From: Selaginella moellendorffii
Lineage: Eukaryota; Plantae; Lycopodiophyta
Length of the DNA: 64,000 nucleotides
Assembly (NCBI RefSeq): GCF_000143415.4
Contig: NW_003314332.1
Location: 372,001-436,000 of the forward strand
Direction: 5' to 3'
Of this stretch, positions 43,302 to 64,000 are shown in pieces. The notes below the pieces were generated by a model. It was not told where the DNA came from and made no database searches. It worked only from the letters and a program-made list of their open reading frames with translations. Made by a program: the position numbers and the translations under genes. Position 1 is the stretch's first letter, and every line of letters begins with the position of its first letter.

Positions 43302-46300
43302 TGAGTGCAACACTTGCTTTGGGACATCGGGGTGAAACACCGTGGCCTAACGGCCTGGTATGGGTACCTTTACCCCTCCACTTCCATCCCGAAGGGAAGG
43401 CCCAAGCCCCTAGGAAGGGCGAGGACCAATGAGCCACAAGGTACTCAAGTGGGGCACCACTCCACATGAGCCGGGAGCACCACTGTCGGTTTCCTTTCCG
43501 GGAGTGGGAGCTGCTCTTGAGCACTTCCTTGGGTGGCCCCTTTGGCACCACCCGAGTCCATGCTCACTCCCAACCAAGGCCCCTCGGCCCTAATCTCAAC
43601 CTCAAGTCAGTTTGAAAGCACCATTGGAGAGTTCCTTTAAGACTGGTTCCTAGACCTCACTATCCCTACTATACTTTTGGAACCCCCTGCAGCGCCCCCT
43701 CCCCCTTGGGAGACACACGCTTTGGGCTTTCTTCCTTGACCTGTATTAGTACTCAGACTCGGTCTTGGACTCGATCTCGATCTCGATCTCGGACCCGACT
43801 TCAGACTCGGTCTCAGACTCAATCTTGGACTCGACCTCGGATCTGATCTTGGACTCAACCTCAGACTCGGTCTCGGACCCGATCTCGGATCTTAGACTTT
43901 GTCTCGAACTAGGTCTCGAACTCGGTCTTGGAGTCGGCCTTGGACTCGATCCCAGACTCTATCTCGAACTCGGTCTTAGAGTCAGTCTTGGACTCGATCT
44001 CAGACTCGATCCCATCTGATGAACTCTTTATCATTTCGGTCGTGCTTTCAGGGATCCTTTAGCCTACAACACATCGGGGAGTTGGTTCTTTACAACTCCA
44101 CCACCCATAGAAGAAGTTTGATGCCCACATTGAATGTCTCTTTTTAATCCTACGACTTGTTGACCATGTCTTCAGGGGCATCCCCCCACTTAGCAGTGTG
44201 CTTAAGTTAGCCTCCCTGGCCAAGAGCCCATAACAATAGAATATAGGTGTCCCTATACCCCTCACCTCACCATGCCCTAGTATGGGGTCGGGACTTGAAC
44301 CCAGCTTTGCTTTACTAGGGGGTTGGGACTTGAAGCCAACCGCCGTAGAATATGTCTACGGATTCGATATCCCTGCAGGGAGTTAGGCGTAGTTCCCTAC
44401 GCTTGGTTGACCTAACTAACCCATGCTAATTAGCTTACTTTCAACACGCCTTTGGGTCCCAACACATGCTATTGCTCAACTTCACAAATTAATACTTTAA
44501 TTAAACTTTGCATAAGTACATAGAGTTTTGTCTTGCAGAAATTCCTCCATTACATCTCACACGTTTGCTAGGTTCTCCTTTGGTTCCCATGTTGCTTCAT
44601 AGTGTGGAAATCCTTTCCACTTCACATGGAACTCCCTCGCTTCGTGTCTTTGTCGTTTGCTCTTGTGTGCATTGAGGATGGCCTCAACTTCGTATTCCTG
44701 GATAACCTTAAATAAAGGTCTTACTTGGTCCTTGCAAAGCAGATCCTCAAAGTATAGCTTGAGTAAGTTCATATGGAACATTGGGTGCATCTTCCCCATC
44801 TCTTGAGGAAGTCGAAGGCTGGTAAGCCACCTTACCGATTCGTGCCTCAATCTCGTAAGGCCTTGCAAACCTGCTTAAGGAACTCAAGATTAGTTCATTT
44901 CTAGAAATACATGCATTTTTACCTCTAGGTTAACTTTTGGCTGATCCCACTTGGTAGCATGAGGTTCTTGGTGTTCAGCCACACCTTCTCCCTAGTTTGG
45001 AACTCTACATCCCGGTGCTTCTGGTTCATGTACTTGGTATGGTTTTGTTGAGCCCGTTCCAAAGAATCCCTCACTAGCTTCCAAATATTGAGTCTTTCCG
45101 CCGTGAATGCCTCCACCACGGGTAACTCTCCATGATACTTGGCCACCCCGAGTTCCATAGAACCTTCAATAGCTCACCTATTGATGACTTCCCATGGACT
45201 CACCCCGATATTCGAGTGGTGAGTTGTTATAGCACATTTCCGCAAGTCCCAAATGAATTACCCAATCAGTTTGGTCTCTCGAGACATAGCATCGCAAATA
45301 ATCCTTCAACTGCCTATTCACCTTTTCCATTTGTCCGTATGTTAAGAAATGTTAGTGCCATCAAACTTGACTTAATACCCAATACCTGTCTGTGGGTGAT
45401 AGGCTGCGCTGAATTTCAACTTGGTGCGATACTGTTCCAGGAGAGTTCTCCAGAACCTACTGGTGAAGATCTTATCTCAATCTGAGATGATCTCTTCTGG
45501 CCTTCCCCGTACTCAAACCACTTGTTCGAAGAACAGCTTCGCCACACCTTCCACATCCACTTCCGTTGTGGTGGGTATGAAATGTGCCATCTTCGAAAAT
45601 CAGTCTACCACCACGAATATCGCATCAAACCCCTCGTTTGGGGGAAGTCCCGTAATGAAGTCCATCGTAAGACATTTCTATGGCCGATCTAGAATTGGGA
45701 TGCTTTGTAACAAACCCCCACTAGCCTTAGTCACGGCTTTAACCTGTTGACATCTTGGACATGTCTTTACATAGTCTTGAACGTCCTTAGCCATATCTAG
45801 CTAGTGATACTTCCTCTTGAGTAAGCCTATCATCTTGGGCACTCCGCCGTGTCTTGCAAGAGGTCCGTCATGACACTCTTCTAAGGCTACCTTCCTTAGT
45901 TCCCTTTTTGGAACATACACCCTCGTTTGTTTATAATAGATGAGTCCATTGCGTTTCGCATAACTTGTTTTCTCTTCCATTGGCAACTCACATCTCTGGT
46001 GAGCTTCTCGTGCCTCTTGGTTCCTCAGCAACACTTCTTGTACTAGACCATCATTCTCAAATGTTGTCCGCACATCGTCCCAAAAGGTTGCTGTGGTGCT
46101 AGATATTGCCAACTTCAAGCTTGCTTTTCGACTTAGAGCATCTGCCATGATGTTGCTCTTCCCAGGTTTATACAGAATCTTACAATTAAACTTAGCCAAA
46201 GCATTGGCCCACCAACCTTGTTTCCCTCTTAGGTTGGGTTTGACAAGAAGTGTTTCTTTGCCATATTATCCGTGTAAAATTTGAAGTGCTTCCCAAGGTA

Positions 46301-49300
46301 GTATCGCCACTCCTTGAGCGCTTTGACCACCACAAATAATTCCTTCTCGTAGGTAGGCCACTTTCGCTGAGCTTTGTCCAACTTCTTCAAGAAGAATGCC
46401 ACTAGATGGTTGTCTTGCTTCAAAACTGTGCCCAACGCAAAGTCTGAAGTATCTGTTTCTACCTCAAAGTCCTTACCAAAGTCGAGTAACATCAACATAG
46501 GTGTCTTCCTCAACTTCCCTTTGAGGTGGATAAATGTCGCCTCGCATTCTACTGTCCATACCATCTTCCCTTTACCCATTTGATTCATTAAAGGCAAGGC
46601 TACTCTCGAATAGTGTTTGATAAACTTTCAGTAGTAGTTGCATATCCCCATAAACGCCCTCAACTCATGTACATTTGATGGTCGCTCCCATTCTTGGATT
46701 GTTGGACCTTCTCAGGGTCCACCTTGAGCTCGTCCTTGCCCACCACATGCCCGAGAAACTTTACCTCTTGTTGAGTAAAGTCATATTTGCTCTCTTTAGC
46801 ATACAGCTTGTATTCCCTTAGTTTCTCAAACACCTTCATCAAATGTTTGACATGCTCGCCTAGTGTTTTGCTATAGTTCAGGATGTCATCAATATAGATA
46901 ACTACAAAGTGATCTAGATAGGGTACAAAGATGTGGTTCATCAGTGCCAAAAGTGTTGCCAGCACATTGCACAGCCCAAAGGGCATCACTAGAAATTCAA
47001 AGTTCCCATACCTTGTTCGATAGGTTGTCTTCTCGACATCTTCCTCTGCTACCCTAATCTAGTAATATCCCAACTTTAGGTCAATCCTCGATAAGTATTT
47101 TGCCTTTCCCAACCTATCAAACAGGTCCTCAATCCTTGGCAAAGGGTACTTATTCTTCTTTGTATACTTGCTGAGCAACTGGTAGTCTATGCACATGCAT
47201 ATAGATCCATCTTTCTTTTTCACAAATAACACTAACGCCGCATACGATAACTTCCTCAACCTAATATACTCTTTGTCCACCAATTCTTTTAGTTGGTGCT
47301 TGAGCTCCTCGAGTTCCTTTTTGTTCAAACGATAGGGGGGACGAAACACTACCTTAGCACCCTTGACCAACTCAATCTTGTGCTCTATCGGTTGTGTGGG
47401 GGGCAACCCCGCTAGTAGCTCCTTCGGCATGGTATCTTGGAATTAGTCCAACACCCGTTGGATCACTAAAGGCACTTCTTCCGTTCTTGTATTTTTGTCA
47501 CTCTTCACCGAGAGTAAGCACAAAAATGTTGCCTTAGTTCCTTTAGTGAGTTGTCCTCTCATGGACACCAGGTTTAAGCAGGAGTCTTTGGCCTTACATT
47601 GCCCTACCTTTAGATCTTGGGGCTCCACCTTGGATCATTCTCCCTGGGCATTCGCCAGTACCACAAGGTTCCTACCTTATCCATGCAGGGCTATTATGAA
47701 CCGATTAAATCAATCCATCCCGAAGATTACGTCAAATCCCGCCATGTCCAACACAGTGAAATCTATGTCTACTTTCCAAGTCACTACTTTGACTCTCGCT
47801 TGTCGAAGTACTTCATTGGTGCTTTGGCTACCTTGAACAAACTTTATCGTCCTTGGTTCACCCAGCCGCTACACTGTTAGTTCGGCTTGCCAGACTATGT
47901 CTGCAGCCACAAAATTATTTGAAGCACCCGTGTCAATAAGGATCTTAACAAAGCTACCTTCGAGCTTCCCTTGGAGGGTTAGTAGATGTTGTAAACGACT
48001 CTCTACCAAAGTTGCTCGTGTAATGAGTAACTTTGAGTTAGGGACTAGATCACATACCTCAGTTTGAGTTTCACCCGACTCAATGGCCATATTGGCTCTG
48101 GCCTTCTTCGAGTAGGGATATTCCCTCGAAAAGTGTCCCGCTTCACCGAAGTTGTAGCATACGTTGTTTCCCACGCTGCTAGTAGACTTAACCTTTTTAT
48201 CTGTGGGTTTGTCTCTTTTTGCTTGACTCCCCCACGTACTTGCTCGCTGGCCACCGGATCTGCCCTTCTGGAACCAAGGACTCATTCTTAAAAAACTCTT
48301 CTTGAATTTCCCTTTGCAATATATTCCCCTTGGTTTGGCCCCTTTGCTAAATGTGGACCCCGACCCTGTCATGTTCCCCTTTCGCAAGTTATCATTGAAA
48401 TGCACCTTGATAGCCGCATCCAACGCTTCCTTGTAGTTGGTCAAGTTCCAACGCATCACCTCGCTGCGAGCCTAGGTTTACAAGCCTGATATGAAGGCAT
48501 AGAACGCATCCATATCACCCATATCCGTGACAAGTATCCTCTTTGCCATAAACTCATTCACATACTCTTGAATGGTTCCGGTCTGTTTCAGTGTACTCAG
48601 CTCATCCTTTAGGTGTAGAGTAGCATTCGGAGGAACGTAAGTCGCACAGATCCTCGCCTTCATCATTTCCCAAGTGTCCATCAGTCCTTCATTGGCCTCT
48701 ATTATTCTCCACCAAGACTTGGCATTATCTGCCAAGTATGGTTTTGCACATGGGACCTTCTCTGAGCTTGGTAACTGCAACACTTGAAAGTAGTTCTCCA
48801 TGTCATAAAACTAATCCTCCACCACTTTATAGTCATTCACTCCCTTGAAGACTGGTGGGGGCTTTGGTTTGTACTTGGAAATTGTTTGAGGGATTGATTC
48901 CACTTTGGTCTATTTGACCTTGTTTGGTTCTGCCTTAGTCCCTGCCAAAGGGTCTGCACCTTCTGCTCTGCTAGCATCTGCATTCTTTTGCCTTCTTCCG
49001 CTTCTCGTCATACTTGAGCTTGCATACGAGAGTCTCTAGTAGGGCATTGGTTTGTGCCAATCTTCCTTCTAAAATATCAAATCGAGCCTTAGATGACCGA
49101 ACCTCACCACCAGACTCCTGTTTGGAAGTTTCCTCACTGGAGTCCTCTTCATGCAAGGATTCCTCATCCATAGCCTCTTGTTCGACCGGAGGCTCTAGTT
49201 CTGGAGGAGGTTCAGTCTCCACCTTGGTTTGTTTACTCCCTACCTTCGCCATCTCCCAGCAATCTGCCTCTATCCTTAGCTAAAATTGAAGAAAAGGCTC

Positions 49301-49780
49301 TGATGCCAAATTGTAAGCCACAAATTTTTCCTTTCCAATTTGCCAGCTTACCTCGTTTATCCGACTAACACCGCCTTGGCCTTTGCTAAGTTCCCTCACC
49401 AAGGTTCCTGCTTATTCTACCAACTCCTACTTGGTCCTACTTGGTTTCAACTACTCATTAAATGAGTAATAGAGCGTTAGCCATCCATCCACGGATTTCC
49501 AAATCTCTCCCAATCCCCCTCCCTGGGTTAGACTGAACTTAAGGTTCAACTACACTCCCCAGAGGCACAAGCAGCCAAGCACACCAAACCTCCAGGTTTC
49601 TAACAACCCTTGGTATAACAAGATTTGATCATGGGACCCTCTAAATCCCAAGCCTTGGGTGTAACACTTGTTTTGGGATGCCGAGGTGAAACACCATGGC
49701 CTAACGGCCCGGTATGGATACTTCTACCCCCCCACTTTCATCCTGAAGGGAAGGCCCAAGTCCCTAGGAAGGGCGAAGAC
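43302..49780 (-). mobile_element. Chromovirus Ty3/gypsy element (family A), full gag-pol with stops; both LTRs truncated
   Basis: 5' LTR remnant 49312-49780, PBS TGGCATCAGAGC (~49297-49308), gag 49252-47870 (CYNFGEAGHFSREY), protease ILIDTGAS, RT YIDD, RNase H ETDTSDFALG, integrase, chromodomain YEVEAIL..FHVKWKGFPHYEATWEP (44557-44700), PPT ATGGGTGGTGGAGT, 3' LTR 44094-43302. Confidence 0.95.
44150..44410 (-). ncRNA. Structured RNA cassette in chromovirus 3' UTR (two T-loop hairpins, GACA hairpin, four-way junction)
   Basis: Minus strand reads GGTTGGC-TTCAAGT-CCCAACC, CTAGTA..GGG-TTCAAGT-CCC..TACTAG, GGGTATAGG-GACA-CCTATATTC, then a three-arm junction. Homologous to 54596-55010. Confidence 0.6.
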
Positions 49781-50483
49781 GAGCCTGGGTAGGTTTTGAG
49801 CTCATGAGCTCATGAGCTAAGCTCACAGCTTCTCAAACACAAGAAAAACATTGGTTCGTCCCGAACCAACATCTTTCCATTTTTCAAATTTTGATTTAAT
49901 CTATATTTCCAAGTAAATTCGACCAATAAAATACAAATATAAATATAGATCTGAACACTAAAAGCAATCTAGAAACACTTCTCAAGCTCCGCAACTGTAA
50001 GGCTTGCCTGGTGGATGTGATGGTCGATCTTAGGATCTTGGTTTAGTTCCTGCATAAAAATGTAATAGATGTGCTTGCAGGCTAAATATACCTTTCCCCT
50101 GTTCTCCCGCTGTGTAAAATCTGGACAGGTACAGGATGGATTTTCGCAGATTTTAACAGTGTAGCTTGTACCCTTTGATGACTCAGTCACAATAATAAAC
50201 TCCTTAGCCATAGCATTGATGTAGTTTGTCTTTGTGATTGTGCACTTTAGTGTGAGACACAAAATCCCTAGGCCCCAAAGTGGAGCCGGAAGGGCACCAC
50301 ATGGTAGTGGCCGAAGCGAGAGCCAAAAGAGCGTAACACGTTTGGACCAAAAGCTCCGACTTGAAAAGTCAAGAGCGGGAGTGGAACTCCCAACGAAGTG
50401 CTCGAGGAACGAGCACGAAGCGAGCAAAAGGCAAGGCACCAAAAAGGGACCCAAAAGGACCAACACATGACACGTGGGAGTGT

Positions 50484-51113
50484 CCGAAATGGACTCGAGT
50501 TGGAGTCCGAAGTGGAGTCCGAGATGGACTCGAGTTGGAGTCCGAAGTGGAGTCCGAGATGGACTCGAGTTGGAGTCCGAAGTGGAGTCCGAGATGGACC
50601 CGAGTTGGAGTCCGAAGTGGAGTCCGAGGTGGACCCGAGATGGACCCGAGTTGGAGTCCGAAGTGGAGTCCGAGATGGAGTCCGAGATGGGACCCGAGAT
50701 GGAGTCCGAGGTGGACCCGAGATGGACCCGAGTTGGAGTCCGAAGTGGAGTCCGAGATGGACCCGAGATGGAGTCCGAGATGGAGTCCGAGGTGGACCCG
50801 AGATGGACCCGAAATGGAGTCCGAGATGGAGTCCGAGATGGACCCGAGATGGAGTCCGAGATGGAGTCCGAGATGGAGTCCGAGATGGACCCGAGATGGA
50901 CCCGAGATGGAGTCCGAGATGGAGTCCGAGATGGAGTCCGAGATGGAGTCCGAAGTCGAGACCGAGACCGGGACCGGGACCGAGACCGAGACCGAGACCG
51001 AGATCGGGACCGAGACCGAGGCCGAGGCCGAGACCGAGCCCGAGCCCGAGTCCGAGTCCGAATCCGAGTCCGAGTCCGAGTCCGAGTCCGAGTCCGAGTT
51101 CGAGTCCGAGTCC
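50484..51113 (+). repeat. Higher-order GAGTCC/GAGATGGAGTCC/GAGATGGACCC tandem array in LTR U3 (also 56436-57070, 59766-60205, 62946-63575)
   Basis: 6-, 11-, 12- and 35-bp units read directly; these are the source of the low-complexity ORFs. Confidence 0.95.
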
Positions 51114-54100
51114 GGAGCCTGAGAGGGTGAAAGCCCAAAGCGTTCGTCTCCCAGACCCTGGGGGGTTTGGTGAGCCCCAAAAGTATAGTAGGGGGAGGAC
51201 TGCAGTGGAGCCAGTTTGGCCAGGAAAGGCCAGTTTGGCCCAGGAAGGCCGGACCCAGTGTTGGGTGATGAGCTGCCCACTGGGAAGTCCAAGACTAGAG
51301 TGAACACAGACCGACAAGCGGGGTAGCTTGGTGAAGTGTTCAAGAGCCGGCTCTAGTTCCCCCGGGAGATCGACTGGCCGATGCTCCCAGTCCAAGTGTG
51401 GGTGGCACTACCTACTTGGATACCTGGTGTGGCTCAATGGAACCCGCTCTAAGCCCATGGCTAGAGCACCCAAGGGCAGAAGGCGAGGAGAGTACCCAGG
51501 TGGCTCGCGTAAGGCCACGGTGTTCCGAAATGTTGTCCCAAAGGCCCAGACTGTGGAAAGGAAGAGGAGCAGTCCTCTAGGGTAGTGACCAAGGACACAG
51601 TCGTGTGGTGAGGAAGTCCCAGAGGACCGTGGGACTTAGCGGTCGGGCCTGTGGGTCTCGGTCCAATGGCAGTGTTGGCAAACACGGCCAGGGGCAGAAA
51701 GGGACTTAGTGGGGACTGACAGAGGGATATTGGGGAAGGCTATTCCCCTTGTCGGTGGGCATCCTAAGGATGCTAAGGAGTGGATCTGAGATGACCACTC
51801 ACGGATGGTTTGCCTAGTCTTGGGGAGCCAAGACTGTGATGCAAGTGGTATTGGACTACCAGTGTGGCAAAGGTGATTGGGCATGGCCTTAGCGTAACGG
51901 GCTGCTATGTCGGTGGTACCTTTGAGTGTCGGTCATGGGATCGGACACGTGGAGCACTTGGACCAAGTGCAAAGGTTGAGTGGCATGGATGCCATTCTCG
52001 GGGCTAGCAAGCCCCAAGTCCTGAATGGGACTTATGGAGGTTGTGAATGAGACTCCTCCAAGCGGTCGGAGGTGTGGTTAAGTGACTAAAGTAGAATGGA
52101 AAATTTAGTCTCTTACAATTTGGTATCGGAGCTGTTCCTTAGTCCGACTTTTATTGGTGCTCAAGTATATCACCACTAGTGTTGGCATCGGAAGGTCCAA
52201 GGAGTGGGCCTATCCTTGAGGAGTAGCAACTCGGGAAGACATGGCTCTCCATTACAGTTCATGTGTGAACTTGTAGACGAGGTGGTGGATAGAAAAGGGC
52301 CAATAATGGAACGACTTTGGGATCTTGGGAACAGTGCAAGGTTTTCCTCATTGAGTTGAGGAGGTGATCCAGATGAGCGTTTGACTCAGCAAACGGGCTA
52401 ATGTAGTTGGGGTAAACAACTATAGTTGGGATCACGGGGAAGATAGAGACTCCAAAAACGATAAAGGAGTCACAAGTTTATCCTCACATGGTTGAGGCTG
52501 GTGCTCATGAAGGTGAGACTGGAATGGATGACCGTGAGAGGTCAAGTATGGATGAGGACACGAGTCCTCGAAATGGTAGCCGGGGCTACCTCTAATAAAT
52601 GCTGGAACAACCCAAGGAGTTGGGGGTGTATTAAGTGGATGAGTTGGTATTCTCATCACATGGACAAGTAGTCCTAAGGGGCAAAAGTTGCCCTAGAGAA
52701 CAAAATCAAGTGTCGGAGTAACAATTGTGAAAATAGTCCTTTTGAGTAGGACAGGAATGCAAGAAGTGTATTCCAGTGAGCTAGTGCCTCACAAGTAGGA
52801 CCTTACGGGTCGGTGGATTAACCAAGTCCAAAACTGCTAGACAACTCAAGTAGAGTCAAGGGATGGTCCTAAAAGGACTGATAGAAGCATTTGGACTGAG
52901 GTGTGTTTTACCCCACGAAGGATGGGGGGGGATCATAGGATCCAACGATGAGAACAGAGAGTATCTCATCGATGGCAAAATATGCCATGCTAAAGTTATG
53001 GGAAAGATGTTCCCAGAAGAAAACAACTTTGACACAAAGTTGTGTGTGACCTCTATGGTGTAGTGCTAACGCATGGTTGGCATGAGAAAGAGCGGTGTTG
53101 GTCTTAGCAAAGACTTAAACACGAAGGGGAAGTGTCATAGAGGTAGGCTCGTGGAGCTGATGGTGTGGAGACACCAAATGTGCCAAGGTGTGATACCTTG
53201 AGGCTATGTTGGTGGGTTCATGAGAACCCCTTGCCAAAGGAATCCCAATGGAAATGGGAATGGCATAGCCTATGCGGCAGAGCATGCAGTTGGAGTGCGG
53301 TGACCCAGATAATGATGGAGGTGTGCAAGCACCAAGCAATGAGTTGTAGGACTTGACAACTATGAGGCAACTAAGCAAGAGGTGCAAAATAACTGATTAA
53401 ACGGGTAGAAGGTAGCTACCCAAGACTTCTAGTATAGGGAAGTCGGATATACCCTTACGGGGGATAAGTTTCTTATGTTGCGATATAGTAAGTCAATGTC
53501 ATAAAAGGAAATACTCATTGTCAAGAAAGCCATCATTGGGACACCCGAACACTCTAGAACACCAGAAGGTGGTGTTTGATATCGCGAGGGCAATGGATAA
53601 AGCCCAAGGGACTAAGTCCCTAGCGAATGATGGATAGAAGGTGCTATCCAAATGTCCAAGGTTGCGGAGACAGGAGAGGACTGTCTACCCAAGTTGGACA
53701 AAGCCAAAAATGGAATTTTGGCAAGGCTAGTGATGGGCATGTAAAGGCCCATAAGCAACAAATGTAATCCCAGTGTGTGGGATTATAAGCTGAGCATACC
53801 CGGATTGAGGAACCACTCCCTGGGCTATTGGGTAGGTTCATCCCTAAGAATACTTGCTAAAGCATGACAGAAAGTGCAAAGCTATCCTCCTGGTCTGGAG
53901 GAGAATGACCGAAGGAAAGGTGTGAAGCCAAAGGCAAGTAGTATTGGGATGGAACTGAACCATAAAAATCAAAGGACATATCCAACAGTGGTTATGAAAG
54001 TTGGGAGTGGAGAAGCAAGAGGGTGCTCGAGGATGTTGTTGCTAGCAACCGTGATGCCATGGAGAGTCTAAAATATGGAATTGTCCATGTTAGACTATAT

Positions 54101-54595
54101 TGCAACTATAAAGCTTGCGAAAGGGGAGGCCTTAGCAAGCTGAGGGACAGAGCTCCTTCAAGGTTCCCAAAGACGATTCTAGGTAGCGTAGTACCTAGAA
54201 AGGCCAAGTGTAAATGGTTCATGGAACGCGCGAAATTAGAGTGGCGCAGCAGAAGCGTGGTCTTGAAGCTTGCCATGAGGCAAGGTTATCAAGGTTAGGG
54301 AAGTAGTTCCCGAGTGTTCAAAGAGAGGGCTTTGAACGAAAGTCGATGGTCAAGGACTTTCACGCTTATGCAGGAACCATGTTACAATGGTCGGAGGACT
54401 TGCCAAGTGAGATTGGCACGTCGGGGGAACAAAGACCCTAGTTGAAGGTGATAACTTCAAAAAGGGTGGGCCATGGGGCCGAGCATGGAGGAGTCCATGC
54501 ATGATCACAGACATGTCAAGTGAGAGGACTTGGCAGTGTGGAGGAACTAGGTTCCTAAGCTGTGATCTGTAGCGCGCTTTAAAAATAGGTTGGTG

Positions 54596-55010
54596 CACCG
54601 GCGTGGGGAGTCACACCAGGCATCTAGTGTGATGCCGTCCGTAGATGCATATACGGAGGTTGGGTTCGAGTCCCGACCCTCTAGTGCTTGGGTTCGAGTC
54701 CCAAATCACTAGGGCGTGGTGATGGTTTGGAATATGAGGACACTCATATTTCGGTGGTCATGGACTCTCAGTGGGGAGACTGGTTTGGGCACACCGCCAA
54801 GCGAGGGATGCCTCGGAGTCGTGATGCACGGTTAGATTGCCTAGTGTGAAAGCTCAGCATATCTAACTTGAACGCTTTGGTGCAAGTGGCACCAAGGTCG
54901 TGGTGAGTGAGATGGGGACACCTAATCTCAGTTGCTATGAACCCTTGGCCGTAAGGGCTAGCTTGGGTGCACCGCCAAGTGTGGGGGATGCCCCCGGGGT
55001 TATAGTCAAC
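54596..55010 (+). ncRNA. Structured RNA cassette in LARD interior (hairpin series, two T-loop/B-box hairpins, two copies of GACA hairpin plus four-way junction)
   Basis: GGTTGGG-TTCGAGT-CCCGACC (54658-54678); CTAGTG.TTGGG-TTCGAGT-CCCAA..CACTAG (54681-54712); GAATATGAG-GACA-CTCATATTT (54730-54751); junctions at 54754-54829 and 54931-55010. Confidence 0.65.
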
Positions 55011-58000
55011 AACTTGGAGGTCTAGAAAACCAAGTACCTCTTGGCAACTCTGTTAAGGTGCCAAGGTGAGATCACTAGGTGATCTTATGGCCAGATAAGG
55101 ACAAGGTCCTTGGTTGGCTAAGGAATGAAGTTCCTGGTTCAAAATGTTGAAATTGAACTGTTTAAGGTGGTGTGGCTTGGTCGTGATAACCAAGTGGGAA
55201 GAGCACCTAAGGGAAATAAACTATGTCCATGCGATGGCATAGTGAGTCCGAGGAAAGTAGTCTCTATAAAAGACCCATGGGAGGGTCACGAAGTTGGGCC
55301 ATGGATAGAGCCCATAGCAGAAGATGCTAAAGAGACGTACTAGGGGTGAACATCCTCCGGACTTGGCAAAGAAGAGTCTTTGCTATGGAACCGAAACAAT
55401 ACCTCAAGGAGGGAGGTAGAGATTCGATGTTGCTTGGTGCAACAATCAACGGATAGGAGCAAAAGATGAATGGCCAAGATAGGGCCGTGGAATCCCTTGG
55501 AAGGAATCCAAGTGACAAAGTTAGGCGAGGAACACTAATGTGTTGGACGCTAACAAGTTGCGGGAAAGGAAGTGTGTTTCCAAGGAGGGATTCCGAATTG
55601 CTCCGATTTGGCAAAAGTGGAAGCTCCAAGGGGGGGAGCGGTAAGGTAGCCAAATGATAGGGCCATGAACGGCCCTAGCACAAACTGGAACTTTGGCACG
55701 AAATAGAAGAGAGGATGATGGTGCCCTCGAGTAGAGAACTTCCTAGGATGGGAAGTGGAGTTGCACAAAAGGTGCAAGGCAAGGTGTCGGAGACACCTAG
55801 GAAATTGACTCCAAGAAGTCAAAATCCAAAGTTCCAAAGTGCAAAGGTTATATCGATGGAAATTGAAACTACTCGAGAAGGAGTAGTGGGTTTGACTTAG
55901 AGAAGGGTCTCTAAGAGGTTTAGCAAGAACTAAACCAATAAAAGGAGAGAACCAATCCTTGTGGTCCAATCAGTCTCTAAGTTGGGGAGACTACCCTCCT
56001 TAGAGGATAGGCAAGGCATGGTGAGCCTTTGGTGTCAAACCATGGAGGCATATGCAAAAGGCATGGTGAGCCTTCAATGTCAAACCATTGACAAATATTG
56101 GCTAGGTGCCAAGGATGGAAATGGTAACACATATGGGTGTTACTTTACAAAATGGTTTACCGTTCGATGAGGACATCGAACTTCGTCTATGGGTGGTGGA
56201 GTTGTGAGACACAAAATCCCTAGGCCCCAAAGTGGAGCCGGAAGGGCACCACATGGTAGTGGCCGAAGCGAGAGCCAAAAGAGCGTAACACGTTTGGACC
56301 AAAAGCTCCGACTTGAAAAGTCAAGAGCGGGAGTGGAACTCCCAACGAAGTGCTCGAGGAACGAGCACGAAGCGAGCAAAAGGCAAGGCTCCAAAAAGGG
56401 ACCCAAAAGGACCAACACATGACACGTGGGAGTGTCCGAAATGGACTCGAGTTGGAGTCCGAAGTGGAGTCCGAGATGGACTCGAGTTGGAGTCCGAAGT
56501 GGAGTCCGAGATGGACTCGAGTTGGAGTCCGAAGTGGAGTCCGAGATGGACCCGAGTTGGAGTCCGAAGTGGAGTCCGAGGTGGACCCGAGATGGACCCG
56601 AGTTGGAGTCCGAAGTGGAGTCCGAGATGGACCCGAGATGGAGTCCGAGATGGGACCCGAGATGGAGTCCGAGGTGGACCCGAGATGGACCCGAGTTGGA
56701 GTCCGAAGTGGAGTCCGAGATGGACCCGAGATGGAGTCCAAGATGGAGTCCGAGGTGGACCCGAGATGGACCCGAAATGGAGTCCGAGATGGAGTCCGAG
56801 ATGGACCCGAGATGGAGTCCGAGATGGAGTCCGAGATGGAGTCCGAGATGGACCCGAGATGGACCCGAGATGGAGTCCGAGATGGAGTCCGAGATGGAGT
56901 CCGAGATGGAGTCCGAAGTCGAGACCGAGACCGAGACCGAGACCGGGACCGAGATCGGGACCGAGACCGAGACCGAGGCCGAGGCCGAGACCGAGCCCGA
57001 GCCTGAGTCCGAGTCCGAATCCGAGTCCGAGTCCGAGTCCGAATCCGAGTCCGAGTCCGAGTCCGAGTCCGGAGCCTGAGAGGGTGAAAGCCCAAAGCGT
57101 TCGTCTCCCAGACCCTGGGGGGTTTGGTGAGCTCCAAAAGTATAGTAGGGGGAGGACTGCAGTGGAGCCAGTTTGGCCAGGAAAGGCCAGTTTGGCCCAG
57201 GAAGGCCGGACCCAGTGTTGGGTGATGAGCTGCCCACTGGGAAGTCCAAGACTAGAGTGAACACGGACCGACAAGCGGGGTAGCTTGGTGAAGTGTTCAA
57301 GAGCCGGCTCTAGTTCCCCCGGGAGATCGACTGGCCGATGCTCCCAGTCCAAGTGTGGGTGGCACTACCTACTTGGATACCTGGTGTGGCTCAACGGAAC
57401 CCGCTCTAAGCCCATGGCTAGAGCACCCAAGGGCAGAAGGCGAGGAGAGTACCCAGGTGGCTCGCGTAAGGCCACGGTGTTCCGAAATGTTGTCCCAAAG
57501 GCCCAGACTGTGGAAAGGAAGAGGAGCAGTCCTCTAGGGTAGTGACCAAGGACACAGTCGTGTGGTGAGGAAGTCCCAGAGGACCGTGGGACTTAGCGGT
57601 CGGGCCTGTGGGTCTCGGTCCAGTGGCAGTGTTGGCAAACACGGCCAGGGGCAGAAAGGGACTTAGTGGGGACTGACAGAGGGATATTGGGGAAGGCTAT
57701 TCCCCTTGTCGGTGGGCATCCTAAGGATGCTAAGGAGTGGATCTGAGATGACCACTCACGGATGGTTTGCCTAGTCTTGGGGAGCCAAGACTGTGATGCA
57801 AGTGGTATTGGACTACCAGTGTGGCAAAGGTGATTGGGCATGGCCTTAGCGTAACGGGCTGCTATGTCGGTGGTACCTTTGAGTGTCGGTCATGGGATCG
57901 GACACGTGGAGCACTTGGACCAAGTGCAAAGGTTGAGTGGCATGGATGCCATTCTCGGGGCTAGCAAGCCCCAAGTCCTGAATGGGACTTATGGAGGTTG

Positions 58001-59224
58001 TGAATGAGACTCCTCCAAGCGGTCGGAGGTGTGGTTAAGTGACTAAAGTAGAATGGAAAATTTAGTCTCTTACATTTAGCTCTTTTGCCATCTTGATCTT
58101 TTCTTGTGCACCTTTTGAAATGGAAGACCTATATTGTACAGCCTTCCCATTCCTAGCTGGTCATGTATGCCGGTCTAGTGTTGATATTGGTGGCATAGCA
58201 GTACTAATAGCAACATTTGAGAAAGTCTTTAGCTTGAAATCTGCTCTCTCTAGACTTTCAATCTCTTCTTTCAAAAGATTGCAGCTTCGCTCAACTGGCC
58301 ACTCCTCTGGCACAGAATTTGGCTTCAAAATAATTGAGTTGTGGATCCAGCATCAGTCCCACAATAGTAAATCCAGCTTGACTGGCGGCCCTTCACTCCT
58401 AGATCTCGACAACCCTAAAAACATGGCACTGCTGAAGAACTTGAACCTAAGCGCACAAAAGCGAGACACTGACCTCAACTCCCAATCATTCCAGAGCAAC
58501 ATGCATTGCTCATGGCACTAACTCTTCGAATTGCCTAGTTGATACGAGAAACTGGCTCACGAGAAATAACCTTTTCATCCTCTAGCACTGGACTTACTTG
58601 TGTAACAACTAGCACCTCCTCCACTCCATGTTTTTTAGTTCTTTTTCGGTGTCGTGGAACAGAATGGTAGTCAAACTCTGGACGGTGAGAGCTAGAAGGA
58701 GTGATGTTTGACCCATCAAATGTCTGTCGACGCTTCATACGGGCTATTCTCATGTCCCCAAGTGGTTCATAACTTGATTTCATAGGAGTTCCAGCAACAA
58801 CTTCCTCCACCATCTTAGACATTGACCCTATTGCTGGTGTTGTCCTTCTACCAACCCGCTCTTGAAGCCTATCTAAGTTCGGACCTGTACTAGCAAACCT
58901 TGCTTCCTGTGCAGCCAAAGCTTTTGATGACTGCTCAAGAGATCTAGTGAGGTCGGAGAGTGTAGCTTCATAGAGGGACACTTTTCCTTTCCCTGCTTTG
59001 GAAGCTCTCCAACTCCAATGTTTGCTCTCATAGAGATTAATTGTTGGTGTAAGTGCAAAATCATCAAGTGGTTGATCCTACAAAAAATGCAACATTTGAA
59101 TGTGACAAAAAAGAAAATGAGAGAAAGCTTACATGGAGAGTATAATGACCCCACTGAAACATTCGAACTTCCCACCATGCAAGCCAGCATTCCATTTGTG
59201 GAAGGTTTTCAATTGGCACTTTGT

Positions 59225-59419
59225 TGTAAGCAACCAAAGGGAACGACTTGAGAGACGATCCATGGGGTTCAAATATAGAGGGAAAGGGCCCATGAACAAG
59301 AGTGCACCCCCTTTTCCAATCGGTTAAGGGTCTTGGGATATTTTGGAGTTAAGCGTCCTTGGGTTTGAATAGTACTGGGCTGGGTGACCTCCCGGGAAGT
59401 CTAAACTCAGGAGTTTACA
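59225..59419 (+). mobile_element. Cassandra-type TRIM solo LTR carrying a 5S rRNA-derived core
   Basis: TGTAA..TTACA termini; TTTGT TSD at 59220-59224 and 59420-59424. 59347-59401 AGTTAAGCGTCCTTGGG...TAGTACTGGGCTGGGTGACCTCCCGGGAAGTC matches the plant 5S A-box/IE/C-box. Confidence 0.9.
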
Positions 59420-59531: not shown

Positions 59532-62263
59532 TGTGAGACACAAAATCCCTACACCCCAAAGTGGAGTCGGAAAGGGTGCCACGTGGTAGTGGCCAAAGCG
59601 AAAGCTAAACGAGCATAACACGTTTGGACTAAAAGCTCCGACTTGGAAAGTCGAGAGCGGGAGTGGAACACCCAACAAAGTGCTTGAGGAGCGAGCACGA
59701 GCCAACCAATAAGCAAGGTTCCAAAAAGGGACCCAAAAAGGACCAACACATGACACATGGAAGTGTCCGAAAAGGACCCGAGATGGAGTCTGAGACGGAG
59801 TCCGAGATGGACCCGAGATGGAGTCCAAGATGGAGTCTGAGATGGACCCGAGATGGAGTCCGAGATGGAGTCCAAGACGGAGTCCGAGATGGACCTGAGA
59901 TGGACCCGAGATGGACCGAGACGGAGTCCGAGATGGACCCGAGATGGAGTCTGAGATGGACTGAGACGAAGTCCAAGATGGAGTCCGAGAAGGACCCGAG
60001 ATGGAGTCCAAGGTCGAGACCGAGACTGGGACCAAGACCGGGACTGAGACTGAGACCGAGACTAAGACTGAGACCGAGATCGAGACCGAGACTGAGATCG
60101 GGACCGGGACCGGGACCGAGGCCAAGGTCGAGACCAAGGCCGAGACCGAGCCTGAGCCCGAGCCCGAGTCCGAGTCCGAGTCCGAGTTCGAGTCCGAGTT
60201 CGAGTCTGAGAGGGTGAAAGCCCAAAGCGTTTGTCTCCCAGACCCTGGGGGGTTTGGTGAGCTCCAAAAGTATAGTAACGGGGAGGATTGCAGTGGAGCC
60301 AGTTTGGCCAGGAAAGGCTAGTTTGGCCCAGGAAGGCCGGACCCAGTGTTGGGTGATAAACTGACCACTGGGAAGTCCAAGACTAGAGTGAATACAGACC
60401 AACAAGCGGGGTAGCTTGGTGAAGTGTTCAAGAGCTAGCTCTAGTTTCCCCGGGAGATCGATTGGCTGATGCTCCCAGTCGAAGTGTGGGTGGCACTACC
60501 TACTTGGATACCTAGTGTGGCTCAATGGAACCTCGCTCTAAGCCCATGGCTAGAGCACCTAAAGGCGGAAGGTGGGGAGAGTACCCACGGGGCTCGCGTA
60601 GGGCCACGGTGTTCCGAAATGTTGTCCCAAAGTCCCAGTCTGTGGAAAGGAAGAGGAGTAGCCCTCTAGTGTGGTGACCAAGGACACAGTCACACAATGA
60701 GGAAGTCCTAGAGGACAGTGGGACTCAGTGGTCAGGCCCGTGGGCCTTGATCCAGTGGTAGTGTTGGTGGATATGGCCATGGACGGAAAAGGGGCTTGGT
60801 AGGAACTGACAAAGGGATATTGGGGAAGGCTATTCCCCATGTCTGTGGGCATCCTAACGATACTAAGGAGTGGATCTGGGATGACCACTCATGGACAAAT
60901 GGCCTAGTCTTGGAGAAACGGGATTGTGATGCAAGTGGTATTGGACCACTAGTGCGGCAAAGGTGAATGGGCATGGCCTTAGCGTAACAGGCTGATATGT
61001 CAGTGGTACCTTTGAGTGTCGGTTTTGGGACCGGACACGTGGAGCACTTGGACTAAGTGCAAGGGATGAGTGGCATGGATGCCATACTCAAGGCTAACAA
61101 GTCCCAAGTCCTGAATTGGACTTAAGGAGGTTGTGAATGAGACTCCTCCAAGTGGTCGAAGGTGTGGTTAAGTGACTAAAGTAGAATGGAAAAATTAGTC
61201 ACTTACAATTTGGTATTAGAGCTGTTCTTTAGTCTGACTTTTATTGGTGCTCAAGTATATCACCATTGATGTTGGCATCGGAAGGTCCTAGGAGTGGGCC
61301 TATCCTTGAGGAGTAGCATGTCGAGAGAACATGGCTCTCCACTCAAGTTCATACGTGAACTTGGGCGCAATGTGGTGGATAGAAAAGGGCTAGTAAGGGA
61401 ACGACTTTGGGATCTTGGGAACAGTATAAGGGTTTCCTTAGAGAGTTGAGGATGTGATCCAGATGAGTGTTTAACTTAGCAAACTGGCTGATGTGGTTGT
61501 GGTAAACAACTACAGTTGGGATCACAGGAAAGATGTAGACTCCAAAATAATAAAGGAGTCACAAGATTACCCTTATATAGTTCAGGCTGGTACTCATAAA
61601 TTTGAGACCGGAATTTGTGACCGTGGGAGGTCAAATACAGCAGAGGACACCAGTCCTTAAAATGGTAGATAGAGCTACCTCTAATAAATGCTGGAACAAC
61701 CCAAGGAGTTGGGGGTGTGTTTAAAGATAAGTTGTTATTCTCATCACATGGACAAGTATTCCTAAGGGGCAAAAGTTAACCCCAAGAAAATCATCAAGTG
61801 TTGGAGTAACACTTGCAAAGATTGTCCTTGTGAGTAGGATATGAGTACAAGAAGTTGTATTCCAGCTAGTTGGCACCTCAAAGACTAAGACCTCGCAGGT
61901 TGTTGGATTAGCAAAGTTCAAATGTTGGATGACTCAAGTGGAGTCAGGCAATGGTCCTAAAGGATTGGTTGAAGCATTTGGACTGAGGTGTATGGTGCCT
62001 CATGAGGTATGGGGAGGATCGTAAGATCCAAGTATGAGAACAGTAGGTATCTCATTGATGGCAGAATGTGCTATACTAAAGTTGTGGGAAAGATGTTCCC
62101 AGAAGAAGGCAACTTTGGCCCAGAGTTGGGTGAAAACACTATGGTGCGGTGCTAACGGATAGTTAGCATGAGGAACAACTATATTGGTCTTAGCAAAGAC
62201 CTAGACACTAATAAGTAGTGTCATAAGGGTAGGCTCGTGGGGCTGATGGTGTGAAGACACCAA
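59532..62263 (+). mobile_element. Older, truncated family-B LARD copy (LTR 59532-61207, PBS 61211, interior to ~62263)
   Basis: Colinear with 50251-53177, with many transitions. Confidence 0.92.
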
Positions 62264-62710
62264 AGAAGACATTCAGCTCTTGCCGCGAGGCATTTTCGTT
62301 TGCCACAAAGCTAGAAAGAGAGCTTCTGGTCGACTTGGGGATTGCTAGAATTGATTTTGACCAAGCCATCATCCCGTCAGAGTCATCTTGTGCAGTTGTT
62401 CACCTATCCACACCAAATTCTGTCGCTATTAAGCATACACCTCCAGCTCTTGAGAACTTTGTCAATGAGATGCGGCAGCTAAAGGAGATCATTCTGCAAC
62501 AACAATCACACCATGACAAACTGCTCTAGGAGCTGGTGGAGTCAAAGAAAGAGGCTGCTACAGCTCGGGAACACAGATTTAAGTCCCGTTGGTGCACTCA
62601 CTGCGAGACGAACACACACAACACACAGCGTTGCTTCAAGCTTCACCTAGAGCTTCGGCCTCCATCTTCTCAACGTGCCCAACAACATCCCTTCACTGAT
62701 AACTCCACAC
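62264..62710 (+). mobile_element. Retrotransposon gag fragment
   Basis: CCHC knuckle WCTHCETNTHNTQRCFKLHLELRP (~62590-62660) after a coiled-coil-like segment with an in-frame stop. Confidence 0.7.
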
Positions 62711-64000
62711 TGTGAGACACAAAATCCCTAGGCCCCAAAGTGGAGCCGGAAAGGGTGCCACGTGGTAGTGGCCGAAGCAAAAGCCAAATGAGTGTAACAC
62801 GTTTGGACTAAAAGCTCTAACTTGGAAGGTTGAGAGCGGGAGTGGAACTCCCAACAAAGTGCTCAAGGAGCGAGCACGAAGCGAGCAATAAGCAAGGCTC
62901 CAAAAAGGGACCCAAAAAGGACTGACACATGACACGTGGAAGTGTCTGAGATGGACTCAAAATGGAGTCTGATATGGAGTCCGAGATGGACCTGAAGTGG
63001 AGTCCAATATGGAGTCCGAGATGGAGTCCGAGATGGACCCGAAGTGGAGTCTGAGATGGAGTCCAATATGGAGTCCGAGATGGACCCGAAGTGGAGTCTG
63101 AGATGGAGTCCAATATGGAGTCCGAGATGGACCCGAAGTGGAGTCCGATATGGAGTCTGAGATGGAGTCCGAGATGGACCCGAAGTGGAGTCCAATATGG
63201 AGTTTGAGATGGACCCGAAGTGGAGTCCCATATGGAGTTTGAGATGGACCCAAAGTGGAGTCCGATATGGAGTCTGAGATGGGACCCGAGATGGACCTGA
63301 AGTGGAGTCCGAGATGGACCCAAAGTGGAGTCTGATATGGAGTCTGAGATGGACCCAAAGTGGAGTTCGATATGGAGTCTGAGATGGACCCGAAGTGGAG
63401 TCCGATATGGAGTCCGAGATGGGACCCGAGATGGAGTCCGAGATGGACCCGAAGTGGAGTCCGATATGGAGTCCGAGATGGGACCCGAGATGGAACCGAG
63501 ACCGAGACCGAGTCCGAGTCCGAATCCGGGACCGAGACCGAGTCCGAGTCCGAGTCCGAGTCCGAGTCCGAGTCCAAATACTAATACAGGCAGTTGGGTG
63601 AAAGCCCAAAGCGATTGTCCCCCGGGGGGGGGGGGGGGGGGGGGCTACGGGGGGTTCCAAAAGTATAGTAGGGAGAGTATGGGGGTTGAAACCCAGTGGA
63701 GCCAGTTTGGCCCAGGAAGGCCAGACCCAGTGTTGGGTGATGAGCTGACCACTGGGAAGTCCAAAACTAGAGTGAACACGGACCGACAAGCGGGGTAGCT
63801 TGGTGAAGTGTTCAAGAGCCGGCTCTAGTTCCCCTGGGAGATCGACTGGCCGATGCTCCCAGTCCAAGTGTGGGTGGCACTACCTACTTGGATACCAGGC
63901 ATGGCTCAATGGAACCTCGCTCTAGGCCCATGGCTAGAGCACCCAAGGGTGGAAGATGGGGAGAGTACCCAGGTGGCTCGCGTAAGGCCACGGTGTTCCG
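62711..64000 (+). mobile_element. Family-B-type LTR (runs off window), mosaic with family A
   Basis: Starts TGTGAGACACAAAATCCC with no PPT upstream; repeat array, TATA module and 5S-like segment present. Confidence 0.9.

What the first reader, a model, noticed from the sequence alone, without database searches (positions are those of the whole stretch)
54596..55010. Covarying structured-RNA cassette shared by a non-coding LARD and the 3' UTR of its likely autonomous chromovirus
Seen: the same ordered series of stems occurs in the protein-free LARD interior and, on the sense (minus) strand, at 44150-44410 between the chromodomain and the PPT of family A. The GACA-hairpin plus junction module occurs three times (54716-54829, 54900-55010, 44158-44275). 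Stem sequences differ but pairing is kept: GAATATGAG/CTCATATTT, TGAGATGGG/CCTAATCTCA and GGGTATAGG/CCTATATTC, all with a GACA loop, and CTAGTG/CACTAG vs CTAGTA/TACTAG. The junction has three inner arms with conserved loops (GCAC.CCG, GATG). An upstream GTGGTG can pair with the loop CACCGC, which would form a pseudoknot. Inference: this is a conserved cis-acting RNA element (packaging, dimerisation, export, translation or possibly catalysis) retained and duplicated in an element that lost all coding capacity. I do not recognise it as a known RNA family.
Basis: partly seen in the sequence, partly recalled or inferred. Interest (0 to 1): 0.85.

Follow-up and report, generated by a model that had tools for sequence, protein, structure and literature searches.

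The report
Shared structured RNA domain with tRNA-like hairpins
A non-coding retrotransposon of the clubmoss Selaginella and a broken copy of its protein-coding partner share a folded RNA domain of about 260 bases, including two hairpins identical to a tRNA T arm, whose pairing has been kept while its letters changed; it is probably a signal that lets the non-coding element use the partner's proteins, but this rests on only three copies in one window.

Summary
The window is from Selaginella moellendorffii. A complete LARD (50251-58074, + strand, TSD TTTAG) and a truncated, heavily broken chromovirus copy (family A, 49780-43302, - strand) share LTR ends, the PBS, a hairpin plus PPT of 40 nt, and one interior block: the cassette. 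It has two parts. X (LARD 54596-54715; A 44410-44274) is a row of five hairpins. M is a GACA hairpin plus a four-way junction, present three times (54716-54833, 54894-55014, 44273-44155).

For M, 95% of pair cells are standard pairs and 13 of 38 pairs changed on both sides. No shuffle matched this, and slid controls gave 34-50%. X is conserved rather than covarying.

Two X hairpins match real tRNA T arms letter for letter. The whole LARD interior is equally hairpin-rich, so folding energy does not single out the cassette. No relative was found in any collection I could reach.

Rfam, ARAGORN and ribozyme models give nothing, and the proposed pseudoknot has no support.

Best reading, which is inferred: a cis-acting recognition domain from the partner's 3' UTR, kept in the LARD for mobilisation in trans. 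The function is untested. Interest is moderate.

The parts
50251..58074 (+). Complete LARD: two LTRs and a non-coding interior, flanked by the 5-bp target site duplication TTTAG (50246-50250 and 58075-58079)
   Evidence: LTR pair 98.2% identical. Ends and TSD read. No ORF above 139 aa in the interior. No protein remnants.
50251..52117 (+). LARD 5' LTR (TGTGAG...CTTACA), with a 12-nt tandem repeat of about 50 copies at 50482-51110
52121..52132 (+). LARD primer binding site TGGTATCGGAGC, two bases (AT) after the LTR
   Evidence: Family A has the same AT spacer and TGGCATCAGAGC at 49308-49297.
54596..54715 (+). Cassette domain X in the LARD: hairpins H0-H4. H3 (54662-54682) and the inner part of H4 (54688-54704) are tRNA T-arm look-alikes. 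H4 as a whole is a 13-bp hairpin.
   Evidence: Fold z -3.3. Helices. T-arm motif 4 matches in the window vs 0.36 expected. The 17-mer is identical to the T arm of real tRNA genes in 19 of 20 loci.
54716..54833 (+). Module copy M1: leader, P1 hairpin with GACA loop, outer stem P2 and arms A, B, C (four-way junction)
54834..54893 (+). Spacer between M1 and M2. It forms two hairpins and has no counterpart in family A.
54894..55014 (+). Module copy M2. This is the copy closer to family A's (71% vs 63%) and shares its 3' flank GTCAACAA.
56163..56202 (+). LARD pre-PPT hairpin (7 bp, AGGA loop) and purine tract directly before the 3' LTR, shared with family A
   Evidence: 87.5% identity to 44134-44095. 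Sequence.
56203..58074 (+). LARD 3' LTR
43302..49780 (-). Family A chromovirus copy, truncated in both LTRs (5' LTR remnant 49780-49312; 3' LTR 44094 down to about 43302)
44539..48801 (-). Family A gag-pol (gag, RT, RNase H, integrase, chromodomain), broken: at least 3 frame changes and about 20 in-frame stops
   Evidence: Pfam hits on ORF pieces. Counts and outer bounds only.
44274..44410 (-). Cassette domain X in family A's 3' UTR (same order of hairpins; T-arm look-alikes at 44337-44325 and 44302-44290)
44155..44273 (-). Module copy M3 in family A's 3' UTR
44095..44134 (-). Family A pre-PPT hairpin remnant and purine tract before the 3' LTR

Best explanation
The cassette is a cis-acting, structured part of the element's genomic RNA. 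It arose in the 3' UTR of a Selaginella chromovirus lineage and was kept, with the M half doubled, in a LARD that lost all genes and depends on that lineage's proteins.

Shown:
- The two elements are partners by anatomy. They share LTR ends, the AT spacer plus PBS, and the pre-PPT hairpin plus PPT.
- The cassette is the only other interior stretch they still share.
- The sense-strand RNA can fold into X (five hairpins, two of them tRNA T-arm look-alikes) and M (a GACA hairpin plus a four-way junction).
- M's pairs have been kept through many two-sided changes.

Inferred:
- The fold is read by the partner's Gag or Gag-Pol, so LARD RNA is taken into particles together with, or in place of, the partner's RNA.
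- The repeated units (two T-arm hairpins, two M modules) act as multiple binding sites.
- The T-arm look-alikes may use the protein surface that also selects the primer tRNA.

In the LARD the cassette sits 1.2 kb from the PPT, so the role is not tied to the PPT itself.
For: - Partner anatomy.
- The cassette and the PPT block are the only significant interior matches, while the rest of the LARD interior has no nucleotide or protein similarity to family A.
- M module: 94.8% of 96 cells are standard pairs. 10 of 33 pairs changed on both sides, against 4.7 +/- 1.4 in shuffles (0 of 500 shuffles reach it). With partners slid by 1-3 columns, 34-50% are paired and 0-4 pairs changed on both sides. Three more two-sided changes lie in the outer part of P1.
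- M1 and M2 sit in one young LARD (LTRs 98.2% identical) and are only 62% identical, yet both keep every helix. This divergence therefore happened while the lineage was replicating.
- X: paired columns are 85% identical, other columns 57%, plus 16 gap columns. Hairpin H1 has a different sequence but sits at the same place.
- Each M copy alone folds to the same junction.
Against: - There are only three M copies and two X copies, from two elements in one window. The structure was derived from the same sequences on which it was counted.
- In 150-nt windows the whole LARD interior has a mean z of -2.7 (+ strand) and -3.0 (- strand), so the cassette is not thermodynamically special and the strand is not settled by energy.
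- In wider context the junction is not the minimum-energy fold of M2 or M3. The mean pair probability is 0.26 and 0.38, against 0.76 for M1.
- X shows almost no covariation.
- There are no expression or binding data.
- No relative was found among 5.8 billion proteins, 1.84 billion representatives or 241 million metagenome records.
- A distant chromovirus (L005) has essentially no 3' UTR and no cassette, so the domain is not general to chromoviruses.
Confidence: 0.4

Rival explanations
1. Host-factor element: the same folded RNA works through host proteins rather than the element's own. It could act in nuclear export, stability, translation or transport of the unspliced RNA. The T-arm hairpins would be read by enzymes or carriers that normally recognise tRNA.
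For: - Two hairpins are identical to real tRNA T arms.
- The cassette works at two different distances from the PPT.
- The structure conservation is the same as for the best explanation.
Against: - Nothing in the sequence distinguishes this reading from recognition by element proteins.
- The RNA is not a recognisable tRNA as a whole.
- The T arms are internal, not at a 3' end.
Confidence: 0.2
2. Passenger: a tRNA-derived or SINE-like piece was captured once in the common ancestor's 3' UTR, for instance by template switching onto a packaged tRNA, and has simply been inherited. The hairpins reflect its origin and local duplication, not a function.
For: - T-arm identity to real tRNAs.
- Local duplications: a 28-nt period across the two T arms and M1/M2.
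- The whole interior is hairpin-rich anyway.
- tRNA-derived sequences in Selaginella LTR elements are on record (Helenus-1_SMo, PMC10886601).
Against: - M1 and M2 are 62% identical, yet about 95% of pairs are kept and 13 pairs changed on both sides. Neutral decay would not give this.
- The cassette stayed alignable while the rest of the interior did not.
- There is no tRNA-wide similarity, no target site duplication and no tail around it.
Confidence: 0.2
3. Nested miniature LTR element (TRIM, Helenus-like): M1 and M2 would be its two short LTRs and the spacer its interior. M3 would be a solo LTR in family A.
For: - M1 and M2 are about 115-nt direct repeats 178-184 nt apart, and each can be read from TG to CA.
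- Selaginella has a TRIM with 120-bp tRNA-like LTRs and an 85-bp interior (PMC10886601).
Against: - There is no target site duplication around M1-M2 or around M3.
- The spacer has no PBS after M1 and no purine tract before M2.
- The X-to-M junction and the 3' flank GTCAACAA are conserved between the LARD and family A. This fits one inherited block, not two independent insertions.
- The T-arm motif lies in X, not in M.
Confidence: 0.03
4. Self-cleaving ribozyme, or an internal RNA polymerase III promoter or other DNA-level element.
For: - A four-way junction is one ribozyme architecture.
- A T arm coincides with the downstream promoter box of tRNA genes (own knowledge).
- z-scores are equally low on both strands.
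Against: - No ribozyme or tRNA family matches at gathering score over the whole window, or at E up to 10 around both cassettes.
- ARAGORN finds no tRNA.
- G-U pairs in P1 and P2 would be mismatches on the other strand, and folds of the - strand are 13-17 kcal/mol weaker across M.
Confidence: 0.05

Closest known systems
LARDs and their conserved non-coding core (barley Sukkula type; Kalendar and co-workers, as cited in PMC7215508)
   Same: Long LTRs, a PBS and PPT, a protein-free interior of several kb that 'specifies well-conserved RNA secondary structures', and dependence on an autonomous partner.
   Different: - A lycophyte host.
- The partner can be named from the same window.
- The shared part is a discrete block of about 260 nt from the partner's 3' UTR.
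- The structure was tested here for two-sided changes, and it contains tRNA T-arm look-alikes.
Non-autonomous LTR elements carrying small-RNA-derived sequence: Cassandra (5S rRNA), Helenus (tRNA-like), including Helenus-1_SMo of S. moellendorffii (PMC10886601)
   Same: An LTR retroelement that carries a piece looking like a tRNA. Same host species for Helenus-1_SMo.
   Different: - In those elements the small-RNA piece lies in the LTR and is thought to serve as a pol III promoter.
- Here only the T arm is tRNA-like, it lies in the interior or 3' UTR, it is also present in the protein-coding partner, and it is part of a larger fold.
cis-acting RNA domains of retroviruses and yeast Ty elements (packaging and dimerisation signals, transport elements in the 3' region, tRNA-like or tRNA-binding segments that help primer use); own knowledge, not tested
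   Same: Structured, repeated non-coding RNA units in the genomic RNA that act in cis and must be kept by any defective element that is to be mobilised in trans.
   Different: No sequence or model match to any such family in Rfam. The function here is inferred, not shown.
Viral tRNA-like structures at the 3' end of plant RNA virus genomes (e.g. PMC8127992)
   Same: Use of a T-arm/T-loop mimic within a viral or virus-like RNA.
   Different: Those sit at the very 3' end, mimic a whole tRNA and can be aminoacylated. Here the hairpins are internal, doubled, and not part of a recognisable cloverleaf.

Membership tests
LARD (large retrotransposon derivative) | Two long LTRs, a PBS and PPT, and a target site duplication | tested here: met
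   LTRs of 1867 and 1872 bp, 98.2% identical. PBS at 52121-52132. Purine tract before 56203. TSD TTTAG.
LARD (large retrotransposon derivative) | Interior of several kb without gag, pol or env | tested here: met
   4085-bp interior, longest ORF 139 aa. tblastn with chromovirus polyproteins and the family A pieces gives nothing below E 0.27.
Chromovirus (Ty3/gypsy with chromodomain), for family A | Order gag - RT - RNase H - integrase - chromodomain on one strand between LTRs | tested here: met
   Pfam Retrotrans_gag, RVT_1, RT_RNaseH_2, Integrase_H2C2 and Chromo on successive ORF pieces of the - strand. The genes are broken.
tRNA or tRNA-like structure | T arm: a 5-bp stem with a 7-nt loop of the tRNA type | tested here: met
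   The 17-mer of LARD hairpin H4 occurs at positions about 49-65 of predicted tRNA-Lys, -Arg and -Val genes in 19 of 20 bacterial loci checked. There are four such motifs in the window, all in the two cassettes.
tRNA or tRNA-like structure | Whole cloverleaf recognisable by tRNA models | tested here: not met
   ARAGORN finds none in the window. No Rfam tRNA match even at E up to 10. Local alignment to real tRNAs stops at the T arm.
tRNA or tRNA-like structure | Position at the 3' end of the RNA with an acceptor end | tested here: not met
   The cassette lies upstream of the PPT and the whole 3' LTR in both elements.
Retrozyme or other self-cleaving ribozyme | A match to a ribozyme core (hammerhead, twister, HDV-like and others) | tested here: not met
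   No Rfam family at gathering score in 64 kb. No ribozyme family at E up to 10 around either cassette.
Helenus-type TRIM | Two short LTRs around a PBS and PPT, a 5-bp target site duplication, and the tRNA-like part inside the LTR | tested here: not met
   No duplication flanking M1-M2 or M3. No PBS or purine tract in the spacer. The T arms lie outside the repeated unit.
tRNA-derived SINE | tRNA-related head with both promoter boxes, a tail, and a target site duplication | tested here: inconclusive
   Only the T-arm part is tRNA-like, and no tail or duplication is seen. The upstream promoter box was not scanned, because I hold its consensus only from memory.
Known retroelement cis-RNA families in Rfam | A covariance-model match | tested here: not met

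The most novel reading that the evidence does not exclude
A lycophyte chromovirus lineage uses tRNA mimicry inside its genomic RNA. Tandem T-arm hairpins next to a four-way-junction module would form a recognition domain that couples genome selection to the machinery that handles the primer tRNA, or to host tRNA enzymes. A gene-less LARD would persist by carrying, and doubling part of, that domain. This would be a new class of retroelement cis-RNA, and a direct handle on how non-autonomous LTR elements are chosen by their partners.
Probability: 0.15. Interest if true: 0.7.

Novelty: new variant of a known kind. Interest (0 to 1): 0.45.

Why it matters
How gene-less LTR retrotransposons (LARDs, TRIMs) are recognised by the proteins of their autonomous partners is largely unknown in plants. 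Usually only LTR ends, the PBS and the PPT can be pointed to.

Here a discrete fold of about 260 nt is the only other thing the two partners still share, and its pairs have been kept through two-sided changes. That makes it a concrete candidate for the recognition signal.

The tRNA T-arm look-alikes suggest what kind of protein surface might read it. If a genome-wide census confirms the pattern, the domain would merit an RNA family entry and would make partner recognition testable in an early-diverging land plant.

Tried and rejected
Searches for relatives:
1. The chromodomain piece against 5.8 billion proteins gave no hit. Against 1.84 billion representatives it gave only distant chromodomain proteins and chromoviruses of algae, fungi and metagenomes, at most about 50% identical.
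2. The RT piece gave at best 56-62% identity, to angiosperm elements.
3. A 22-base cassette pattern in 241 million metagenome records gave one match, inside a 634-aa ORF of an unrelated contig, taken as chance. The same pattern in viral contigs gave none. A second pattern gave one match (L002) that the model does not support.
4. Two Selaginella loci reached through PPR proteins (L003, L004; 46 kb) are gene-dense and hold no cassette. A third look-up found nothing, and a Tanacetum locus came without DNA.
5. The 3' flank of a distant intact chromovirus (L005, L006) has no 3' UTR to speak of and no cassette.

Readings rejected:
6. Nested TRIM: rejected (see rivals).
7. Ribozyme: no model match.
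8. Pseudoknot between the GGUG leader and the arm-B loop: no covariation. The change in M3 weakens the pairing, and there is a competing partner upstream.
9. Folding z-score as a mark of the cassette: rejected, because the whole interior is alike.
10. The truncated second LARD copy (59532-62264) lacks the cassette, but it ends before the homologous position, so it says nothing.

Slips, as the rules ask me to report:
- None of these is written in this report or was sent to a tool, with one exception. One degenerate position in the PBS pattern was chosen from memory.
- The T-arm claim was re-based on tool results.
- brought in 118 uncultivated viral contigs by a 17-nt pattern. I did not open, identify or use them.

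Consensus lines printed by the alignment and model tools were not used.

Full report
**Source and layout.** The window is plant DNA. A 667-aa PPR ORF (15418-17418, - strand) is 98% identical to a Selaginella moellendorffii protein, and it has CAP-domain and FRIGIDA-like neighbours.

From about 39.7 kb to the end, the window is a cluster of LTR retroelements.
- A complete LARD lies at 50251-58074 on the + strand. Its LTRs are 1867 and 1872 bp and 98.2% identical. They begin TGTGAG and end CTTACA. The 5-bp target site duplication is TTTAG.
- Its PBS, TGGTATCGGAGC, sits two bases after the 5' LTR, and a purine tract sits directly before the 3' LTR.
- Its 4085-bp interior has no ORF above 139 aa and no trace of gag or pol.
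- This copy is dead. gag-pol (outer bounds 48801-44539) shows at least 3 frame changes and about 20 in-frame stops against a distant intact polyprotein. Both LTRs are truncated.

**Are the two elements partners?** By anatomy, yes.
- Family A's LTR also ends CTTACA and is followed by AT and TGGCATCAGAGC.
- Its 3' LTR is preceded by the same 40-nt block as in the LARD, a hairpin plus purine tract, 87.5% identical.
- The tandem-repeat part of the two LTR families is 68-73% alike, in the orientation expected.
- That this PBS matches the initiator tRNA is my own knowledge and was not tested.

**The observation.** A sensitive comparison of the whole LARD interior with family A gives just two significant matches, the PPT block and the cassette. 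Aligned directly, LARD 54596-54833 and family A 44410-44155 are about 68% identical. I divide the cassette into X and M.
- X (LARD 54596-54715; family A 44410-44274) is a row of five hairpins, H0 to H4.
- M is a leader, a 9-11-bp hairpin P1 with a GACA loop, and a long outer stem P2 enclosing three arms, which makes a four-way junction.
- Arm A has 4-5 bp. Arm B has 5-6 bp, with an 8-nt loop GCACACCG, GUGCACCG or GCACACUG. Arm C has 4-5 bp, with a loop GAUG or AUG.
- A covariance model of M finds three copies in the window and nothing else: 54716-54833 (M1), 54894-55014 (M2) and 44273-44155 (M3). The next hit has E 0.24.
- M2 is the closer counterpart of M3, at 71% identity against 63% for M1, and shares its 3' flank. 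The LARD therefore carries X-M1-spacer-M2 where family A carries X-M3.

**Is it more than chance, and is the structure real?**

For M:
- On the model-based alignment, with my structure restricted to columns that are in register in all three copies, 94.8% of 96 cells are standard pairs.
- 10 of 33 pairs changed on both sides. None of 500 column shuffles reaches either value.
- Sliding the partners by 1-3 columns drops pairing to 34-50% and two-sided changes to 0-4.
- The outer half of P1 cannot be put in common columns because M2 has a one-base bulge. Counted from the loop outward, all 9 shared positions pair in all three copies, and 5 of them changed on both sides. The total is therefore 13 of 38 pairs.
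- The broken pairs are nearly all in M3, the old copy. Its differences from the LARD are often CG to CA on both strands of a stem, as expected from decay of methylated CpG.
- The cleanest comparison is M1 against M2. They lie in one young LARD and are only 62% identical, no more alike in paired than in unpaired columns, yet each keeps every helix.
- The caveats are serious. There are three sequences, the structure was derived from them, and two of them are paralogues.
- In a wider sequence context the junction is the minimum-energy fold only for M1. The mean pair probability is 0.76 for M1, 0.26 for M2 and 0.38 for M3.

For X:
- With two sequences there is little to count: one two-sided change in H0 and one at the top of the outer stem of H4. 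H1 is a hairpin of unrelated sequence at the same place.
- What X shows is conservation. Paired columns are 85% identical and the rest 57%, with 16 gap columns.

- Hairpin H3 and the inner part of H4 are tRNA T arms. The motif occurs four times in the window, twice in each cassette, against 0.36 expected.
- The 17 bases of the LARD's inner H4 hairpin are found, letter for letter, at positions about 49-65 of predicted tRNA-Lys, -Arg and -Val genes in 19 of 20 bacterial loci that I checked.
- The likeness stops there. ARAGORN and the Rfam tRNA model see no tRNA, and local alignment to those tRNAs covers only the T arm.
- The two T-arm hairpins are a local 28-nt duplication that predates the split of the two elements.
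- The cassette is not thermodynamically special. In 150-nt windows the whole LARD interior averages z -2.7 on the + strand and -3.0 on the - strand. It reads as a string of short hairpins, purine-rich, with CCAAG as its most over-represented 5-mer.
- Across M, the + strand folds are 13-17 kcal/mol more stable than the - strand folds. Several pairs are G-U. Both points fit an RNA of the sense strand, but the z-scores do not decide it.

**Known families.** No Rfam family matches, at gathering score over the whole window or at E up to 10 around either cassette. That includes ribozymes and retroviral elements.

A nested TRIM of the Helenus kind, described from this very species (PMC10886601), does not fit. 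There is no target site duplication. There is no PBS or purine tract in the spacer. The T arms lie outside the repeated unit, and the junctions to the flanks are conserved between the two elements.

The pseudoknot is possible on paper, but nothing covaries. The same GGUG can also close the X domain by pairing with an upstream CACC.

That LARD interiors hold conserved RNA structure is an established idea (PMC7215508, citing the original LARD work). My literature searches found no description of this domain, or of T-arm hairpins in the 3' UTR of an LTR element.

**Relatives elsewhere.** I found none. The details are under 'tried and rejected'. In short, no protein closer than about 50-60% to family A is in the collections. 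One metagenome pattern match is a chance hit in an ORF. 46 kb of other Selaginella DNA has no copy. A distant intact chromovirus goes from the pol stop almost straight into its purine tract. The truncated second LARD copy in the window ends before the homologous position.

**Mechanism.** The shown facts are shared partner anatomy, a single shared interior block, maintained pairing in M, conserved stems and T arms in X, and a position that is free relative to the PPT.

From these I infer a cis-acting RNA domain that came from the partner's 3' UTR and is kept because the LARD needs it to be handled by the partner's proteins. The most likely role is selection of the RNA for particles, with the repeated units as multiple binding sites (confidence 0.4).

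A host-factor role (0.2) and a functionless captured tRNA-derived passenger (0.2) remain open. The passenger reading is the one that the two-sided changes argue against. That the fold is under selection for some function I put at about 0.6-0.65.

**Novelty and verdict.** This is a new variant of a known kind: a conserved structured domain shared by a non-autonomous LTR element and its partner, here with tRNA T-arm mimicry in the interior rather than small-RNA sequence in the LTR.

Interest is moderate (0.45). The pattern is clean and gives a concrete candidate for partner recognition. But it rests on three copies, and the function is inferred.

The functional test lies outside what this report may propose. 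The genome-wide census with a phylogeny-aware covariation test is the decisive descriptive step.

My slips are stated under 'tried and rejected': motifs recalled from memory in my reasoning, one degenerate base, and unopened viral contigs.

Noticed in passing
window 15415-20011: Host gene cluster: an intact 667-aa PPR ORF (- strand, 98% identical to a S. moellendorffii protein), a CAP/PR-1-like ORF (17940-18659) and a FRIGIDA-like ORF (18839-20011). This identifies the source as Selaginella moellendorffii.
   Followed up: partly
window 39736-40884: Solo LTR of family A (1149 bp, TGTAAG...CTTACA) with the 5-bp target site duplication TTAGG on both sides. It is 84% identical to the LTR remnants of the family A copy.
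   Followed up: yes
window 50482-51110 and 56434-57071: The LARD LTRs hold about 50 tandem copies of a 12-nt unit (higher-order periods 35, 93 and 174). This array produces spurious ORFs of 200-400 aa on both strands. The same kind of repeat links the LARD LTR to the family A LTR.
   Followed up: partly
window 52118-56202: The entire LARD interior is purine-rich (A 30%, G 30%) and folds well below its shuffles almost everywhere (mean z about -2.7 to -3.0 on either strand). CCAAG is the most over-represented 5-mer (23 seen, 6.4 expected), often as one side of short CUUGG/CCAAG stems. The interior may be built from many diverged hairpin units.
   Followed up: partly
window 54592-54599 and 54966-54973: The 8-nt palindrome GGTGCACC occurs twice in the LARD interior, both times inside the cassette: once at the 5' edge of X and once spanning the stem end and loop of arm B of M2. 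A self-complementary loop could let two RNAs pair loop to loop. M1 and M3 do not have it, so it is unsupported by comparison.
   Followed up: no
window 44155-44410 vs 54596-55014, and 44134-44095 vs 56163-56202: Many differences of the old family A copy from the LARD are CG to CA (or TG), including in both T loops and on both strands of the pre-PPT hairpin. This looks like decay of methylated CpG after insertion and explains most broken pairs in M3.
   Followed up: partly
window 59532-64000: A second LARD copy is truncated after 1 kb of interior: LTR 59532-61210, PBS TGGTATTAGAGC at 61211, interior alignable only to 62264. It is followed by unrelated DNA and a further LARD LTR from 62712 to the window end. 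No cassette is present, but the homologous position is not covered.
   Followed up: yes
window 35091-37223: Two repeats of about 200 bp (35091-35291 and 36986-37160, 77% identical) lie near a PBS-like TGGTATCCGAGC at 37212 and enclose a 274-aa ORF without a Pfam match. This is possibly another small LTR element.
   Followed up: no
window 5101-5680 / 9623-10188; 10553-10878 vs 59222-59403: In the AT-rich first 12 kb there is a direct repeat of about 580 bp at 73% identity. A piece of about 150-300 bp there is also similar, in inverted orientation, to DNA just right of the LARD. These are other repeat families and were not identified.
   Followed up: no
L005 4617-4700: A distant intact chromovirus from a metagenome (1489-aa polyprotein) has its pol stop followed almost at once by a purine tract and AT-rich LTR-like DNA. 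A long structured 3' UTR is therefore not a general chromovirus trait.
   Followed up: partly
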